Assembly (NCBI GenBank): GCA_977020255.1
Contig: CDROCS010002422.1
Location: forward strand, 62,001-126,000
From: Obrimoposthia wandeli
Taxonomy: Eukaryota
Length of the DNA stretch: 64,000 bases
Direction of reading: 5' to 3'
Below are positions 3-49,913 of the stretch, piece after piece (positions within the stretch are counted from its first letter, which is position 1; each line of letters begins with the position of its first letter). Made by a program: the position numbers and the translations under genes. The notes below the pieces were generated by a model. It saw nothing but the letters and a program-made list of their open reading frames with translations, searched no databases and was not told the DNA's origin.

Positions 3-272
3 ATTGGTCTTGTCGATGTTCAAGAAAAAGTTAATCGGGTTGCCAAGCTTTATCACGCTGAATTTTCTAAGCTAGCCGACTCAAAAGTGACCATTGAATA
101 TAAAAAACTCAGCGTTGAAGATAAAGATACAACCGAGCGTAAAGGTTATTTGTATAGTCATTCAGCCAAAATTTTTGTCATTGACAAGAAAAGCCGAGTG
201 CGTGGTTTTTTCTATATGGGTACGCCGCTAGCAGACATGCGAGATCAAGTGATCGAATTATTAAATAATTAA
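3..272 (+). CDS. SCO/SenC family copper protein, C-terminal part (5' truncated by window)
   Basis: Frame is open from the window edge; ends ...YLYSHSAKIFVIDKKSRVRGFF, the typical SCO C-terminal H-S-x-x-I-F-L-I-D motif; next gene is a PCu(A)C chaperone. Confidence 0.75.
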   Translation: MGLVDVQEKVNRVAKLYHAEFSKLADSKVTIEYKKLSVEDKDTTERKGYLYSHSAKIFVIDKKSRVRGFFYMGTPLADMRDQVIELLNN

Positions 273-414
273 AGGGCAAGCCCTCTCGCATAGCGAGACT
301 TCACTTCGTGAAGCGGGGTATTTCTAGTTATTTTGGGTTCTAATAAGTTCACGCCTTAAGGGCCGTGGTATTTACCTTTGATGAGTTAGGTTATGCCTAA
401 TTCATCTCTATTAA
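273..414. repeat. Dispersed multi-hairpin intergenic element (relative of the 17.8-18.4 kb array unit)
   Basis: Hairpins agggc-aa-gccct, ctcgc-ata-gcgag, cttcac-ttc-gtgaag; aligns with 17831-17937 (cttcacttYgtgaagcggggtat ... gcctaattcatct). Confidence 0.85.
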
Positions 415-430
415 AATTTTGGAGAAATAC

Positions 431-16240: not shown

Positions 16241-17635
16241 ATGTCCCTATCATTACAAGATAAAATGTTTCAAGAAATGCGCGATAAAGAAATTTTTGAT
16301 CAAGCGCAGCAACATGCTTACGATTATTTAGATAATGCACTAGAACGTAATGTTTACCCAACTGAGAAAGCGCTGGCTAACTTAGCACATTTTGATCAGC
16401 CTCTTGCTGATAGTTCGACACCTACTGCACAAATTCTCAATGATCTACATCAATACGGTTCGCCTGCAAGCGTCTCACAAATTGGTGGGCGTTATTTCGG
16501 ATTGGTCAATGGTGGTATTGTACCGGCATCCCTTGCTGCACGTTGGCTAGCTGATGTTTGGGATCAAAACACTCCTTTGTATGTGACCTCACCTATCAAC
16601 TCAATCTTAGAAAGTGTGACTGAGCGCTGGCTTAAAGAACTACTTGGTTTACCAGATAATGTAGTGGCAGGTTTTGTCAGCGGGTCATCCATGGCTATTT
16701 TGTGTGGTTTAGCGGCTGGCCGCTATCGTATTTATGATAACGCAGGCTGGGATATCAATAAAAAAGGTTTTTACGGTGCACCTGAAATTAAAATCATTGC
16801 TGGCAAACACGCCCATGGTACGGTGGTAAAAGCCGCTGCCTTACTCGGCTTTGGTGTGGATAATATTCAATGGATTGATGTAGATGATCAAGGCAGAATT
16901 AAAGCAGATCAAGTGCCTGAACTTGATGACAGAACGATACTAATTCTACAGGCGGGTAATGTAAATTCTGGTGCATTTGATGATTTTGCAACCTTATGTA
17001 AACGAGCACACCAAGCGAATACTTGGGTGCATATCGATGGTGCATTTGGTTTATGGGCTGCAGGATCTAGCAAGTTAAAGCATTTAACTGAGGGTATGCA
17101 AACGGCTAACTCATTCTCAGTGGATGGCCACAAAACCCTAAATACCCCTTACGATAGTGGCATCATCTTATGTAACGATAAAGAAGCGTTAGTGAGCGCA
17201 TTGCAGGCCTCTGGCAATTATATTCTCTATTCTGATAAGCGCGATGGCATGCATTACACCCCTGAAATGTCGCGCCGCGCCAGAGTTATAGAACTGTGGG
17301 CGACACTTAAATATTTAGGCAAATCAGGCGTGGATGAATTGGTAAGCTCACTACACTCAAACGCTGTACTCTTCAGTGAGCAATTAACAGCCCAAGGCTT
17401 CAACATTCTCAATGAAGTTGTATTTAATCAGATACTGGTGGGTTTTGATGAAGATGCTACTGCCGCTAAAATCATAGCGCTGATCCAAGCTTCTGGTGAA
17501 TGCTGGGTAGGTGCTGGTGCCTGGAATGGTAAACCTGTTATCAGGATAAGCGTATGCTCTTGGGCAACAACCGAGCATGACATTGAGCGCTCAGTACAGG
17601 CATTTGTTAATGCTAGAGATCAAATAAATTGCTAA
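16241..17635 (+). CDS. Group II PLP-dependent amino acid decarboxylase
   Basis: WVHIDGAFGLW, SVDGHKTLNTPYDSG (PLP lysine); divergent from MocR. Confidence 0.9.
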   Translation: MSLSLQDKMFQEMRDKEIFDQAQQHAYDYLDNALERNVYPTEKALANLAHFDQPLADSSTPTAQILNDLHQYGSPASVSQIGGRYFGLVNGGIVPASLAARWLADVWDQNTPLYVTSPINSILESVTERWLKELLGLPDNVVAGFVSGSSMAILCGLAAGRYRIYDNAGWDINKKGFYGAPEIKIIAGKHAHGTVVKAAALLGFGVDNIQWIDVDDQGRIKADQVPELDDRTILILQAGNVNSGAFDDFATLCKRAHQANTWVHIDGAFGLWAAGSSKLKHLTEGMQTANSFSVDGHKTLNTPYDSGIILCNDKEALVSALQASGNYILYSDKRDGMHYTPEMSRRARVIELWATLKYLGKSGVDELVSSLHSNAVLFSEQLTAQGFNILNEVVFNQILVGFDEDATAAKIIALIQASGECWVGAGAWNGKPVIRISVCSWATTEHDIERSVQAFVNARDQINC

Positions 17636-17799
17636 ATTGTCGTAGCTTAGTGGCTAAGTGCAGCGAAGAGTAAATGCAGCGATCACATGGATATGAATGA
17701 GCTATAGAGGCAATGGTAAGACAACCTCTCGCAGAGCTCAGCTAAATCATGGACGACCTAGCTGAGCGAGAACTTTGTCATGACTGCTGTGAATCAACA

Positions 17800-17851
17800 A
17801 CCCCGAGGCAGGTCTTCTCGCTTCGCTCATCTTCACTTTGTGAAGCGGGGT
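17800..17851. repeat. Branched hairpin leading into the tandem array
   Basis: Outer stem accccg...cggggt with inner cttcac-ttt-gtgaag. Confidence 0.7.
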
Positions 17852-17859
17852 ATATCGAG

Positions 17860-18359
17860 TTTCTTTAGACTGCACTAGTTCAGTGCCGGGGAATTAACCC
17901 TTAATGATTTAGACTCCGCCTAATTCATCTTTACTAAATGAGCCTTTTATCTGCACAAATTTCTTTAGACTGAACTAGTTCAGTGCCGGAGAATTAACCC
18001 TTAATGATTTAGGCTCCGCCTAATTCATCTTTACTAAATGAGCCTTTTATCTGCACAAATTTCTTTAGACTGAACTAGTTCAGTGCCCGGGAGTTAACCC
18101 TTGATGATTTAGGCTCCGCCTAATTCATCTTTACTAAATGAGCTTTTTATCTGCACAAATTTCTTTAGACTGAACTAGTTCAGTGCCCGGGAGTTAACCC
18201 TTGATGATTTAGGCTCCGCCTAATTCATCTTTACTAAATGAGCCTTTTATCTGCACAAATTTCTTTAGACTGAACTAGTTCAGAGCCGGGGTACTTACCC
18301 TTGATGATTTAGGCTCCGCCTAATTCATCTTTACTAAATGAGCTTTTTATCTGCACAAA
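17860..18359. repeat. Tandem array of five 100 bp units
   Basis: Units start at 17860, 17960, 18060, 18160, 18260; each has the palindrome actgaactagttcagt (variant in units 1 and 5), a taggc-tcc-gccta hairpin (variant in unit 1) and a copy of the last ~27 nt of the 18334-20190 gene. Confidence 0.98.
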
Positions 18360-20190
18360 ATTGACTAAAAGTAGCTGACAACAGTTCAACATTAGTCTCA
18401 GGAGATAAAGCAACCCGTACAATGTAGTCTTTATCGTGCTCTTTGGTCGTTCCCTGGGTGGATGTTGCCGGTATCGTCCAATAACTGCCTTTAAGCTGTC
18501 CGTAACTAACACAGTGTTTACACTCTGTTGGGTGCACCTCTATCATATGCTCTATCAGCTGACTATTGAGCATTTTGCTAAAAGCTTGTCGCTCCTCGCC
18601 CGTTTCACCTATGGTCGGTAGATCCAAAGAGAACACTGAAGGTGTAAACCCTAACTCAGCTAAATCATCAGAGACAAAGTTGATTTTTGCAACCGGTAAT
18701 ACCTGTTGAATATGCTGAACAAATTGACGGGTTTTAAGATAGGCCGCATGGATGCGCTCTGGCATTGAAGGCATCGTTTCAGCTAACGTAATCAACTGGT
18801 GCTCCAAGGCACTGTTATCAGACAGCACAAGATGCTTGGCAATGATCGTTAACAGCGCACTCGCTTTATCGTTAGTCGCACAGTATCCGGCGATACACAA
18901 TCCACCACTCGGAAATTTCGAGCCACTGGAGAAAGAAACTGTTTTCACACCCGCCAGCTCACTCATCTGATCAAGCAACCTTACATTCGGGCAGAATGTT
19001 TGATCAACCATAAAGGTCGGCTCAATCGCCAAACTACCCTGTGGGGTCATACGTTTAGCGCTTAGCACTGCACCTAGATCATCTAGATTTGGCACTTCAA
19101 CCCGCGGGTTAGTCGGTATTTCGGCCAGTACTATCGGTACACCGTCGATTTTAGCAACGCCAGTAAGTGCCGTGTCTAAGCTGGCAACTAAATCTTGGCC
19201 ACCATCCACTAATAGATCAACAATACTCGCAGCCGGTATCAGAGCTGCCACACGTCGAGCCTGATCATTAGTGCCACCATAACAGTTAGGCGGTAATATT
19301 ATGTTAATCGGTTTGCCTGCATGCTCGACTAGCGCATCTTCAACTAACCCCATTAAAATGGCATATTGAACAGACAACCCACTGGTTGCTATTAGCGGCG
19401 TTGATGAACTGCCAGTATTGGCTTTGATACAGTCATAAAGACTATCTAGCTGCTGTTGTGAACAGCTGGTAACAGCGATGACTTCTTCGCCAACTATTTC
19501 CCGTAACAACTGCAACGCATTCACAGGGGTTATTGCTATTGATTCACGTCTTCTTACATGCTGCACATCACTAATTAAAGCTTCAATATCAGTATTATGC
19601 ACAAACATTGTGCTGCCGTAGTGTGGATGAATATTCACAGTCGCATCAATGTGAGCACTAGTGCTTAAGCAGGTTTTATAAGACGACTGTGTAACGAAGA
19701 TCACCGTACCATCACTGTGCGAAGGCACCTCAAGTACGCTGTTGACCTTGTGTAATTGAGCTTTATAACCATAGATGTTTTCAAGTCTTGGCAAGTCAAT
19801 TAATGGAGAGTTCTGCGTATCGTAATAAACATAGGTTTTACGATCCAATAAGCAGTTTTTACGCAACACAGCGAGGACAGGCATAGTGTTTGATGCAAAT
19901 GAAATAACTTGTTCCGCATCCAGTTTATTTATTTGTGCTAAGAGCCACTCTAATACACAGGACAATTGATGACCTAGGCGAATATAATCATAAGCCGTAG
20001 GCAGGTTTTCTAATGCTTGAGCTGAAAGTTTACCACTATCTTGTAGAGCGATTAACTGCGATAGAAACTGTGATTTAGCTTGTTTTTCATCATAGATATC
20101 TAAACGGTGAGTGGTTAAATTGATCCAGCTACTAGGCAGGTTTTCAAGGATTTTCCTTGTTGTTTGTAAGCATTGTTCTATTGAATTCAA
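18334..20190 (-). CDS. Cys/Met-metabolism-type PLP-dependent enzyme with long N-terminal extension
   Basis: CYGGT, EIPTNP, VDQTF, SGSKFPSGG motifs of the cystathionine gamma-synthase/beta-lyase fold; 618 aa. Confidence 0.75.
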   Translation of the reverse strand: MNSIEQCLQTTRKILENLPSSWINLTTHRLDIYDEKQAKSQFLSQLIALQDSGKLSAQALENLPTAYDYIRLGHQLSCVLEWLLAQINKLDAEQVISFASNTMPVLAVLRKNCLLDRKTYVYYDTQNSPLIDLPRLENIYGYKAQLHKVNSVLEVPSHSDGTVIFVTQSSYKTCLSTSAHIDATVNIHPHYGSTMFVHNTDIEALISDVQHVRRRESIAITPVNALQLLREIVGEEVIAVTSCSQQQLDSLYDCIKANTGSSSTPLIATSGLSVQYAILMGLVEDALVEHAGKPINIILPPNCYGGTNDQARRVAALIPAASIVDLLVDGGQDLVASLDTALTGVAKIDGVPIVLAEIPTNPRVEVPNLDDLGAVLSAKRMTPQGSLAIEPTFMVDQTFCPNVRLLDQMSELAGVKTVSFSSGSKFPSGGLCIAGYCATNDKASALLTIIAKHLVLSDNSALEHQLITLAETMPSMPERIHAAYLKTRQFVQHIQQVLPVAKINFVSDDLAELGFTPSVFSLDLPTIGETGEERQAFSKMLNSQLIEHMIEVHPTECKHCVSYGQLKGSYWTIPATSTQGTTKEHDKDYIVRVALSPETNVELLSATFSQFCADKKLI

Positions 20191-48235: not shown

Positions 48236-48885
48236 TGCGCGTTTTAATCATTGATAATTACGATTCTTTTACCTTTAATTTGTATCAGTACGTGGGCGAC
48301 ATTTTATCGCGTGAGCTTGAAGGGCAAACCTTTGAAGTGGTTGTGAAACGCAACGATGAAATTGGCTTAGATGAAATTCGACAACTCGCTTTTGATCGCA
48401 TCATTATTTCCCCAGGCCCTGGTACACCTGAAGATATTGCCTATTTTGGCATTTGTTCGCAAGTGATTAAAAAGCTTGGGGTTCACACGCCAGTATTAGG
48501 CGTTTGCCTAGGTATGCAAGGTATTGCGCACTGTTTTGGCGCTAAAGTGGTACTGGCCGGTGTGCCAATGCACGGTAAAGTATCGCCTATCAAACACGAT
48601 GAGCAAGGGGTGTATCAAGGGGTTCCACAACAGCTTGAAATTATGCGCTATCACTCGTTAATGGTGGATGTAAATACTTTGCCAGAGTGTTTAGAAATCA
48701 CTTCGGTGATTGATGATGAATACGCGGTTGGCACAAGTGACTTTAAACAAGCCGCACTTAACGGCAGTGAAATAATGGGCGTAAGGCACGTTGATTACCC
48801 TATTGAAGGCATACAGTACCATCCTGAATCCTTTGCCACTGAAGGCGGAAAAACCTTATTGAAAAATTTTTTATTACATAGATGA
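48235..48885 (+). CDS. trpG: Anthranilate synthase component II (glutamine amidotransferase)
   Basis: IDNYDSFT, ISPGPG, GVCLG, RYHSL, QYHPES. Confidence 0.9.
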   Translation: MRVLIIDNYDSFTFNLYQYVGDILSRELEGQTFEVVVKRNDEIGLDEIRQLAFDRIIISPGPGTPEDIAYFGICSQVIKKLGVHTPVLGVCLGMQGIAHCFGAKVVLAGVPMHGKVSPIKHDEQGVYQGVPQQLEIMRYHSLMVDVNTLPECLEITSVIDDEYAVGTSDFKQAALNGSEIMGVRHVDYPIEGIQYHPESFATEGGKTLLKNFLLHR

Positions 48886-48890
48886 TTTGG

Positions 48891-48946
48891 GTCGTGAGTC
48901 GTGAGTCGTGAGTCGTGAGTCGTGAGTCGTGAGTCGTGAGTCGTGA
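48891..48946. repeat. Heptamer VNTR (GTCGTGA)x8
   Basis: Eight perfect units, then a hairpin CGTGAGTAT-N8-ATACTCACG. Confidence 0.98.
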
Positions 48947-49037
48947 GTATTTTTTTTCATACTCACGTTGCTCGCTACTTTTTTGTTGCTTCTTTTTCGC
49001 GCAACTCGCCACTTTCTTACTCGCTACTGTTGTTAAC

Positions 49038-49913
49038 TTAAACTGCTCGCATCCCCTCAATTTTATGCCAATAGCCATTACATTCTTGCGATCTATCCAA
49101 CGCTATTGGATGACCTCCTAGCTCATTCGCTTGGTATTGTTCAAGCAACTCTAGGGTCGACTCTGATTGCGGGCTTAATCGCACCACATCAACAATCCCC
49201 TGCATTGATTTTAGCTCATTAATTAAATTATATTTTAGGCCTGACTGGGTTTGTACGCCGTTGATGACGAACAGCTGATTATCGTCTTGGCTGTTTACAA
49301 TTCGCCCTTGTGGGTAATCAATACAGCACAGTTTACAATCATCTTTTGAGCGGTTTTCAGACCGAGCGGTAAAGCAGCGGGCTGAATATGCCAGTGGCAT
49401 GTTGCCATAGGCGAAGACTTCTACTTCAAAATCTTGCCTTTTGTTTTGTAATATAGGATCAGTGACGATTTTAACTAGCCAATCGCGAGATAGCTCAACC
49501 GGCATAGTCCAACGTTTTAGCCCTTTTTCAATAAACAAGGCGAGCGTCTGGGGGTTGTAGCAGTTGACTGCTGGGCCAATACAAAAGTTTGCACCTTGTT
49601 CTGACAGTACCTGTACTGCTGCTAAATCATTGGCTTCTACCATGAATTCCTGCTGGTCGCAGTAACGTTTTAACATGGTTAAATCTGAGGGTGTTTCTAA
49701 TAAAGTCATGGTAGAAATACACACTTCTTTACCCGCATCTTGCAGCATTTTAGCGATATCAAACCAGTCTTGAGTTTTTAATTCTCGACGTTTAGCGCAC
49801 ACTGTTTCGCCTAAATACACGATATCAATGTTCGATAAAGCTACACGTTTGTAAAAATCTTCTACTCGTTGTTTTGGCCAATAATATTGGATTGGTCCTA
49901 AAGCGTATTTCAT
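49038..49913 (-). CDS. ubiV: Anaerobic ubiquinone biosynthesis U32 protein
   Basis: MKYALGP..YYW, VYLGETVC.KRR, PLAYSARCFTAR. Confidence 0.93.
   Translation of the reverse strand: MKYALGPIQYYWPKQRVEDFYKRVALSNIDIVYLGETVCAKRRELKTQDWFDIAKMLQDAGKEVCISTMTLLETPSDLTMLKRYCDQQEFMVEANDLAAVQVLSEQGANFCIGPAVNCYNPQTLALFIEKGLKRWTMPVELSRDWLVKIVTDPILQNKRQDFEVEVFAYGNMPLAYSARCFTARSENRSKDDCKLCCIDYPQGRIVNSQDDNQLFVINGVQTQSGLKYNLINELKSMQGIVDVVRLSPQSESTLELLEQYQANELGGHPIALDRSQECNGYWHKIEGMRAV

What the first reader, a model, noticed from the sequence alone, without database searches (positions are those of the whole stretch)
17800..18359. Five exact 100 bp units, each made of a palindromic element plus a copy of the host gene's 3' end
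Seen: each unit is ~73 bp of the dispersed element plus ~27 bp encoding the C-terminus and stop of the adjacent PLP enzyme (CADK[K/R]LI*). The element boundary coincides with the TAG stop codon. Variants are polarised: units 1-2 share ttaat, units 3-5 share ttgat, and the end units diverge most. The array hangs off a larger branched hairpin. Known: RAYT/HUH enzymes have been proposed to amplify REP plus flanking DNA (BIME formation). Inference: a snapshot of element-driven amplification that captures host sequence, rather than simple slippage.
Basis: partly seen in the sequence, partly recalled or inferred. Interest (0 to 1): 0.75.

Follow-up and report, generated by a model that had tools for sequence, protein, structure and literature searches.

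The report
Hairpin repeat array copying a gene's end
A small hairpin-forming repeat element that sits right against a bacterial gene's stop codon has been duplicated five times in a row together with the gene's last seven codons. This is a clear new example, in an undescribed marine element family, of the tandem "repeat plus flanking DNA" clusters already known from REP elements.

Summary
The array is real but not exact. It has five 100-bp units at 17860-18359, with 11 variable sites and 1-8 differences per pair. Each unit holds about 75-79 nt of a dispersed three-hairpin element plus the last seven codons and stop of the convergent 618-aa PLP-enzyme gene.

The element occurs at least 126 times in the assembly and also in Oceanospirillaceae/Nitrincolaceae MAGs. 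It is typically 150-160 nt and inserts next to a TTAAA, so its end often overlaps a gene's stop codon.

A close relative (95-97% nt identity) carries one full element at the same site. The array therefore arose after insertion, with the caveat that the relative is a MAG assembly in which an array could have collapsed.

At least ten other tandem arrays of the same core hairpin exist: nine in this assembly and one in a MAG. One clearly, and one probably, also repeat the neighbouring gene's last codons.

No RAYT or other enzyme is linked to the element. The window's unit junctions do not lie at the element/stop-codon boundary.

Best reading: tandem duplication promoted by the hairpin, then unequal exchange. 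Element-enzyme-driven amplification remains a live rival.

Tandem REP/REPIN clusters that include flanking DNA, and REP ends that supply stop codons, are already published. Copy number could not be checked with long reads.

This scan's earlier notes record similar REP-like arrays and a stop-codon-hugging repeat on other DNA of this assembly.

The parts
16241..17635 (+). Convergent neighbour gene, a PLP-dependent decarboxylase of 464 aa. It is not the gene whose end is copied.
   Evidence: Pfam PF00282, E 2.3e-34.
17793..17859 (+). Left arm (module A) of the dispersed element. It is a GC-rich outer stem with an inner hairpin, is present once, and lies outside the array.
   Evidence: Aligns to the left arm of the single orthologous element in L080 and to about 40 solo copies. 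Fold.
17860..18359 (+). Tandem array of five 100-bp units. Each unit is the element's middle module plus pre-core, core hairpin and short tail, followed by a copy of the gene's stop and last 7 codons.
   Evidence: TRF period 100, 5.0 copies, 96% matches. Repeat family D1. Variant table.
17869..17884 (.). First of five 16-nt palindromes, one per unit at +100 steps. They are perfect in units 2-4. They replace the middle hairpin of the ancestral element.
   Evidence: Inverted repeats I1-I10. Comparison with L080. Fold.
17903..17929 (+). Core hairpin of unit 1. The other cores are at 18003-18029, 18103-18129, 18203-18229 and 18303-18329.
   Evidence: Pattern search. Core fold -6.3 kcal/mol, z -6.3. 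A T.T mismatch is kept in 112 of 117 copies, and the centre base of the loop varies.
17934..17959 (-). Non-functional copy of the gene's stop plus last 7-8 codons. The other copies are at 18034-18059, 18134-18159 and 18234-18259.
   Evidence: Sequence reading. Units 1, 2 and 4 read K-R-L-I. Units 3 and 5 read K-K-L-I.
18334..20190 (-). Intact 618-aa PLP-enzyme gene of the Cys/Met-metabolism type. Its stop TAG is at 18334-18336, and its real 3' end forms the last 26 bases (stop codon plus the last 7-8 codons) of unit 5.
   Evidence: 8000 homologs of the same length, many carrying PF01053. The C-terminus ...FC....LI* is ancestral. My own Pfam scan was blank.
263..417 (+). Second, solo copy of the same element in the window. 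It has a partly deleted left end and lies just upstream of the ATG at 432.
   Evidence: Core match at 380-406 with 3 mismatches. Sequence.

Best explanation
A non-autonomous, REP/MITE-like element sits immediately beside the native stop codon of the PLP-enzyme gene. It is typically 150-160 nt and has a GC-rich left hairpin, a middle hairpin and a conserved 27-nt core hairpin. It inserted there in an ancestor shared with a related marine Oceanospirillaceae/Nitrincolaceae bacterium.

Inferred steps: later, in the window's lineage, a 100-bp segment was duplicated in tandem. The segment runs from the start of the element's middle module to 21-25 nt inside the gene. The first duplication most likely came from replication template-switching or slippage at the hairpin-rich DNA. 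Unequal exchange between the 100-bp repeats then expanded the array to five units and partly homogenised it. Gene conversion from other element copies probably added the clustered variants.

Shown: the gene itself stays intact, and the four extra gene-end copies are non-coding passengers. The element family as a whole is prone to such arrays.
For: - Array anatomy is given.
- The orthologous locus L080 has flanking genes 95-97% identical and one full-length element at the same gene end, with a TAA stop.
- Thirty distant orthologs have no element and end at the same ...LI stop, 17 of them with TAA.
- The copy number is exactly 5.0. Neither junction lies at the element/stop boundary, and no homology extends beyond 17860 or 18359.
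- Ten other arrays of the same core exist, with periods of 52-72 and 2.2-7.7 copies. Several show decayed edge units, as expected from unequal exchange.
- Arrays make up roughly one in seven of the distinct core loci seen, against two or three unrelated long-period arrays in the rest of the DNA fetched.
- No cognate enzyme was found.
- Published precedent exists. Pseudomonas fluorescens SBW25 has 16 tandem REPIN clusters that include flanking sequence (PMC3116915). [quoted passage not shown]
Against: - There is no microhomology at the window's junctions that would mark a slippage event.
- The left end of the unit coincides with an internal module boundary at which truncated element copies also start elsewhere (L097, L045).
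- In several short arrays the repeated block starts exactly at the first base of the core. Such fixed end points could reflect a site-specific nick rather than polymerase stalling.
- The single-copy state in the relative comes from a metagenome-assembled genome whose assembly method I did not check; a short-read assembly could have collapsed an array.
- The mechanism of tandem REP clusters is unresolved in the literature.
Confidence: 0.5

Rival explanations
1. Element-enzyme-driven amplification. A strand-specific nuclease (HUH/Y1-type or another kind) acts on the core hairpin or a module end and nicks at a fixed point. Replication or excision then runs past the normal end into the gene. The excised or rolling-circle product (a small circle of one unit) is multiplied and recombined back, giving arrays that carry captured flank.
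For: - One end of the repeated block is fixed relative to the element in many arrays. It is the first base of the core in L064, L066 and L071, and within 2-3 nt of it in L065, L067 and L070.
- The window's unit starts where truncated copies start in L097 and L045.
- Flank capture recurs, and the far end of the unit lies a few codons inside the neighbouring gene (WIN, L068, L066).
- Insertion beside a conserved TTAAA without a clear target duplication, together with head-to-tail abutting copies (L093, L089), resembles IS200/IS605-type target-adjacent insertion.
- The core keeps a conserved T.T mismatch, as protein-recognised hairpins do.
Against: - No enzyme is associated with the family. Intact Y1-transposase genes are not flanked by the element. 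RAYT-like genes carry a different repeat. No DUF559 gene lies on any contig seen to carry the core (only 100 of the 126 core matches were listed).
- No long copy of the element carrying a gene was seen; lengths from the left end to the end of the core were 67-158 nt.
- In the window neither junction lies at the hairpin foot or at the stop-codon boundary.
- Seven of the eleven arrays show no detectable flank capture.
Confidence: 0.27
2. Repeated independent insertion of the element at the same TTAAA target. This would give a head-to-tail pile-up of copies, with no duplication of host DNA as such.
For: - Head-to-tail dimers and trimers of complete elements exist (L093, L089).
- Two array spacers resemble element left arms (L089 0 of 200 shuffles, L069 1 of 200).
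- The target TTAAA survives insertion.
Against: - It cannot explain the window. Every unit carries about 21 nt of coding sequence beyond the stop codon, and every unit lacks the element's left arm.
- The units share private features absent from all other copies, namely the 16-nt palindrome and a 10-nt deletion. They are therefore copies of each other, not of dispersed donors.
Confidence: 0.03
3. Assembly artefact. The true locus has one unit, or a different number of units.
For: - Copy number was not confirmed by spanning reads. Only short contigs were available, and they break inside the array.
- The related MAG shows one copy.
Against: - The five units have distinct, substitution-only variant combinations.
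- An independent 503-nt contig reproduces the left junction and unit 1 exactly.
- Nine other arrays of the same architecture are assembled elsewhere in the assembly.
Confidence: 0.05
4. The array is kept by selection as a functional 3' module for the two convergent genes, for example as stacked terminators, mRNA-stabilising hairpins or protein-binding sites. This reading does not exclude any of the mechanisms of origin.
For: - Arrays sit between convergent genes and abut real, complete genes.
- The core followed by a T-rich tail scores as terminator-like on the + strand, with 4 sites against 1.2 expected.
- REP/BIME elements have such reported roles (background in PMC3733652).
Against: - There are no expression data.
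- The units decay at the array edges, and most variants fall in one segment outside the core.
- The close relative manages with one copy.
- Rfam finds nothing.
Confidence: 0.1

Closest known systems
Tandem REP/REPIN clusters that include flanking sequence (Pseudomonas fluorescens SBW25, Bertels and Rainey 2011, PMC3116915; GTAG/CGTC REP families, Di Nocera et al. 2013, PMC3733652)
   Same: Short palindromic extragenic repeats are reiterated head to tail together with a segment of their own flanking DNA. Many such clusters occur per genome. The element ends often provide or touch stop codons. The mechanism is unknown and is described as a 'second mechanism' beside transposition.
   Different: The sequence family is different. 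There is a single conserved AT-rich core hairpin inside a modular three-hairpin element. There is no GTAG or CGTC tag and no RAYT flanked by it. Here the captured flank is demonstrably coding sequence, the last 6-9 codons of the neighbouring gene.
BIMEs of Escherichia coli (REP pairs with fixed linker motifs, associated with RAYT/TnpA-REP)
   Same: Both are arrays of hairpin repeats between convergent genes. HUH enzymes have been proposed as drivers.
   Different: BIME units alternate REP orientation and use linkers that are conserved across the genome. Here all cores point the same way and the linker is specific to each array. No RAYT link was found.
MITEs (for example Correia, RUP, Nezha) and IS200/IS605-derived palindrome-associated elements
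   Same: The element is small and non-autonomous, shows presence/absence polymorphism, has subterminal hairpins, shows a marked target preference, and is tolerated at gene ends.
   Different: The terminal inverted repeats are only about 8-9 nt and imperfect. No clear target-site duplication and no parent insertion sequence were found. Tandem arrays are much more frequent than is usual for MITEs.
CRISPR arrays
   Same: The direct palindromic repeat of about 27-35 nt with a 52-62-nt period would trip CRISPR finders.
   Different: The spacers are the same within an array, and the arrays abut gene stop codons. This is not CRISPR.

Membership tests
REP / REPIN (RAYT-associated) | Short (20-40 nt) imperfect palindrome, extragenic, present in many copies | tested here: met
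   The 27-nt core folds with z -6.3. It gives 126 matches against 0 in the control.
REP / REPIN (RAYT-associated) | Conserved unpaired GTAG or CGTC tag at one end of the hairpin | tested here: not met
   The tail next to the core is TCTA followed by the flank TTAAA (reverse: TTTAA then TAGA). No GTAG or CGTC is present.
REP / REPIN (RAYT-associated) | A RAYT (Y1 HUH) gene flanked by the same repeats | tested here: not met
   None of 20 Y1_Tnp loci is bracketed by the element. One decayed copy has a single element beside it. Two RAYT-like genes are bracketed by a different 25-nt inverted repeat. The search covered only the best-scoring loci.
REP / REPIN (RAYT-associated) | Replicative unit is an inverted doublet of REPs | tested here: not met
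   Solo copies hold one core. Arrays hold direct, not inverted, cores.
MITE | Terminal inverted repeats | tested here: inconclusive
   Only about 8-9 nt of imperfect similarity links the left end (ATAAAGAT...) to the reverse of the right end.
MITE | Target-site duplication | tested here: inconclusive
   The right flank is TTAAA in nearly all copies and belongs to the target, as an empty site in C5599 shows. The left end reads ATAA[A/T/C]. A 3-bp TAA duplication would destroy the ancestral stop of the PLP gene.
MITE | Related autonomous insertion sequence with the same ends | tested here: not met
   All 37 full copies measure 67-158 nt from the left end to the end of the core. No paired ends enclosing a gene appeared in the listed matches. 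The census is incomplete.
MITE | Presence/absence polymorphism between related genomes | tested here: met
   The flanks of the L092 copy are adjacent in G000:C5599, with a 1-nt gap. The L088 site in C6408 holds 43 nt instead of 149.
Tandem REP cluster with flanking DNA | Head-to-tail units, each holding the repeat plus the same piece of local flanking sequence | tested here: met
   Own right flank against own spacer: window z 7.7, L068 z 5.3, L066 z 2.5 against cross-array controls.
IS200/IS605-type palindrome-associated element | Insertion beside a fixed 4-5-nt target without duplication, subterminal hairpins, and mobilisation by a Y1 transposase | tested here: inconclusive
   The TTAAA adjacency and the abutting head-to-tail copies fit. 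No matching transposase ends were found. Cleavage cannot be tested here.
CRISPR | Unique spacers between direct repeats | tested here: not met
   Spacers within each array are 86-98% identical.

The most novel reading that the evidence does not exclude
The family is multiplied by a dedicated, still unidentified strand-specific nuclease. It would nick at a fixed point beside the core hairpin or a module end and produce unit-length circles of 52-100 nt that include the neighbouring gene's last codons. If so, these arrays are footprints of a rolling-circle-like, flank-capturing amplification in bacteria. That would explain the long-unresolved origin of tandem REP clusters.
Probability: 0.22. Interest if true: 0.75.

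Novelty: new member of a known kind. Interest (0 to 1): 0.42.

Why it matters
How tandem REP/REPIN clusters form has been an open question since they were described. This family offers unusually readable cases.

- The captured flank is coding sequence with a known ancestral state.
- A close relative keeps the single-copy precursor.
- Many arrays share one core, and at least one end of the repeated block appears to be fixed.

Together these make the choice between polymerase slippage and a site-specific enzyme experimentally testable. The family also shows how a mobile hairpin element can live directly against stop codons without harming genes.

Tried and rejected
- Rfam, permissive threshold, 17500-18600: no match.
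That strain's locus could not be seen.
- Reads: only Logan contigs were available, so copy number and circles could not be tested.
- Metagenome scan for orthologous loci: only distant relatives (68% aa identity or less), none with the element.
- RAYT link: rejected on present evidence.
- Search for a parent insertion sequence through the left-end motif: most of the 16 matches pair with a nearby core.
- Local-alignment test of array spacers against their flanks: negative except for the window and degenerate extra units. An in-register test and a global test were more sensitive.
- Spacers against element left arms: significant only for L089 and L069. The origin of six arrays' spacers remains undetermined.
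- Literature search for the core sequence: only chance primer hits.
- A 3-bp TAA target duplication was considered and rejected because it would remove the ancestral stop of the PLP gene.

Full report
**What is there**

The window is bacterial DNA inside a very large mixed assembly of 1.35 Gb in 6912 contigs. It is C2422:62001-126000.

At 17860-18359, Tandem Repeats Finder reports a period-100 array of exactly 5.0 copies. It has 96% matches, no indels and a score of 895. It is the only repeat with a period above 21 in the 64 kb.

The units are not identical. There are 11 variable positions and pairwise differences of 1-8. Seven of the 11 positions fall in unit positions 25-37 (P about 2e-4). 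Units 1-2 differ from units 3-5 at position 44. Units 1 and 5 carry the most private changes.

**The two genes**

The array lies between two convergent genes.
- The + strand gene 16241-17635 is a PLP-dependent decarboxylase.
- The - strand gene 18334-20190 (618 aa) gave no Pfam hit of its own.

The - strand gene nevertheless has thousands of homologs of the same length, which carry PF01053 and are named cystathionine beta-lyase/gamma-synthase.

Its C-terminus ...FCADKKLI* matches the ancestral ...FC....LI* of its homologs. The stop is therefore native. Unit 5 contains the real gene end. Units 1-4 contain non-coding copies of the stop plus the last seven codons.

**The dispersed element**

The centre of each unit is a 27-nt hairpin (window:18103-18129).
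- It occurs 126 times in the assembly at up to 2 mismatches, against 0 for the reversed control.
- It occurs 6 times in the window against 0 expected.
- It occurs in marine MAGs labelled Oceanospirillaceae (Nitrincolaceae) and on one Colwellia MAG contig.

Aligning about 60 solo copies shows a modular element, typically 150-160 nt long. In order it holds:
- a left end, ATAA[A/T/C]GATCCCC;
- a GC-rich hairpin of variable length;
- a middle hairpin;
- a short pre-core;
- the conserved core;
- a tail, TCTA, followed almost always by TTAAA.

The core keeps a T.T mismatch in 112 of 117 copies. The centre base of its loop varies. Rfam has no match, and the core sequence appears in no searchable paper.

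**Where the element sits**

The TTAAA belongs to the target, not to the element. In a related contig the flanks of one copy are adjacent, and the homology resumes at TTAAA. A second site also differs between relatives.

Read on the other strand, TTTAA contains TAA. The element therefore often lies exactly against a stop codon.
- Among 23 solo copies with a convergent long ORF nearby, 8 have the stop at that one offset.
- At the left end, 6 of 15 nearby ORF stops (14 copies) coincide with the TAA in the terminus.
- The genes beside seven arrays are real, and where the domain sits at the C-terminus its Pfam profile is matched to its last position.

Di Nocera et al. report the same for GTAG REPs (PMC3733652).

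**History of this locus**

A MAG contig (L080) is 95-97% identical in both flanking genes. It carries one full-length element at exactly this gene end, with a TAA stop. Thirty distant orthologs have no element.

The insertion therefore preceded the array, and the array arose in the window's lineage. The caveat is that a short-read MAG could have collapsed an array.

Compared with the ortholog, the window's units lack the left arm, which is present once at about 17793-17859. They have a remodelled middle module with a 16-nt palindrome and a 10-nt deletion found in no other copy. The five units are therefore copies of each other.

**Other arrays**

The same core forms at least nine more tandem arrays in the assembly, with periods of 52-62 and 2.2-7.7 copies. 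One more lies in a MAG, with period 72. All cores within an array point the same way, and several arrays show decayed edge units.

Spacers are specific to each array. I tested each spacer against its own flank, using the other arrays' flanks as controls.
- The window scores z 7.7, with 0 of 110 controls as high.
- L068 scores z 5.3. Its spacer is a diverged copy of the last six codons of an AsnC-type gene.
- L066 scores z 2.5, with 2 of 110 controls as high. Its spacer resembles the last nine codons of a DUF1513 gene.
- The rest show nothing.

Two spacers (L089, L069) instead resemble element left arms. Those arrays look like head-to-tail concatemers of short complete elements. Abutting dimers also exist (L093).

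In summary, flank capture recurs but is not universal. Six arrays remain undetermined.

**Mechanism**

The proposed cleavage at the CTA/TAG boundary does not fit the window. That boundary is internal to each unit. The junctions are at 17859/17860 and 18359/18360, and the copy number is an exact integer.

No enzyme is tied to the family.
- None of 20 Y1-transposase loci is bracketed by the element. One decayed copy merely has a single element beside it.
- RAYT-like genes are bracketed by a different repeat.
- No DUF559 gene lies on any contig seen to carry the core.

The most economical reading is a tandem duplication promoted by the hairpin-rich DNA, followed by unequal exchange. It is supported by the decayed edges, the partial homogenisation and the published REP clusters.

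Some features keep an enzyme-driven model alive.
- The window's unit starts where truncated copies start elsewhere.
- Several short arrays start at the first base of the core.
- There is no junction microhomology.
- The core's mismatch is conserved.

The literature leaves the mechanism of such clusters open.

**Limits**

- Long reads were not available. One 503-nt contig confirms the left junction and unit 1.
Empty sites and a full census could not be read.
- Earlier notes of this scan report similar REP-like arrays and a stop-codon-hugging repeat on other DNA of this assembly. I treated these as leads only.

Noticed in passing
window 263-417: A second, solo copy of the same element, with its left end partly deleted.
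   Followed up: partly
window 48891-48948: A perfect heptanucleotide repeat, GTCGTGA x 8.3 with 100% matches, between the + gene ending at 48885 and the - gene ending at 49038. It is a possible slippage-prone tract.
   Followed up: no
L124:1651-2488 and L125:1915-2702 (G000:C2735 and C3921): RAYT-like Y1 genes with open frames of 235-253 aa, bracketed by a 21-25-nt inverted repeat of a different REP family (core GGGTCAGAGTAAA).
   Followed up: partly
L121:1196-2371 (G000:C4620): Tandem arrays of period 80-90 nt, up to 5.4 copies, that lack this core. They surround a Y1_Tnp-like match at L121:1501-1827 (G000:C4620:30248-30574): one array lies just upstream of it and the others begin about 70 nt downstream. 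The arrangement recalls the REP clusters next to RAYT genes in Pseudomonas.
   Followed up: no
L110:2070-2212 (G000:C1143): One element copy lies about 210 nt from a decayed Y1-transposase pseudogene with 5 internal stops. This is the only Y1 locus with the element nearby, and it is probably a coincidence.
   Followed up: partly
window 18335-19800, laid run X2: An ice-metagenome contig matches the PLP gene at about 95% identity and stops exactly at the gene's stop codon. This is as expected if a repeat breaks the assembly there in that relative too.
   Followed up: no
L045 (G000:C4455:19941-22967): A cluster of three element copies within 1.2 kb, with several partial middle modules between two cores. 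It looks like a hotspot of nested or adjacent insertions.
   Followed up: partly
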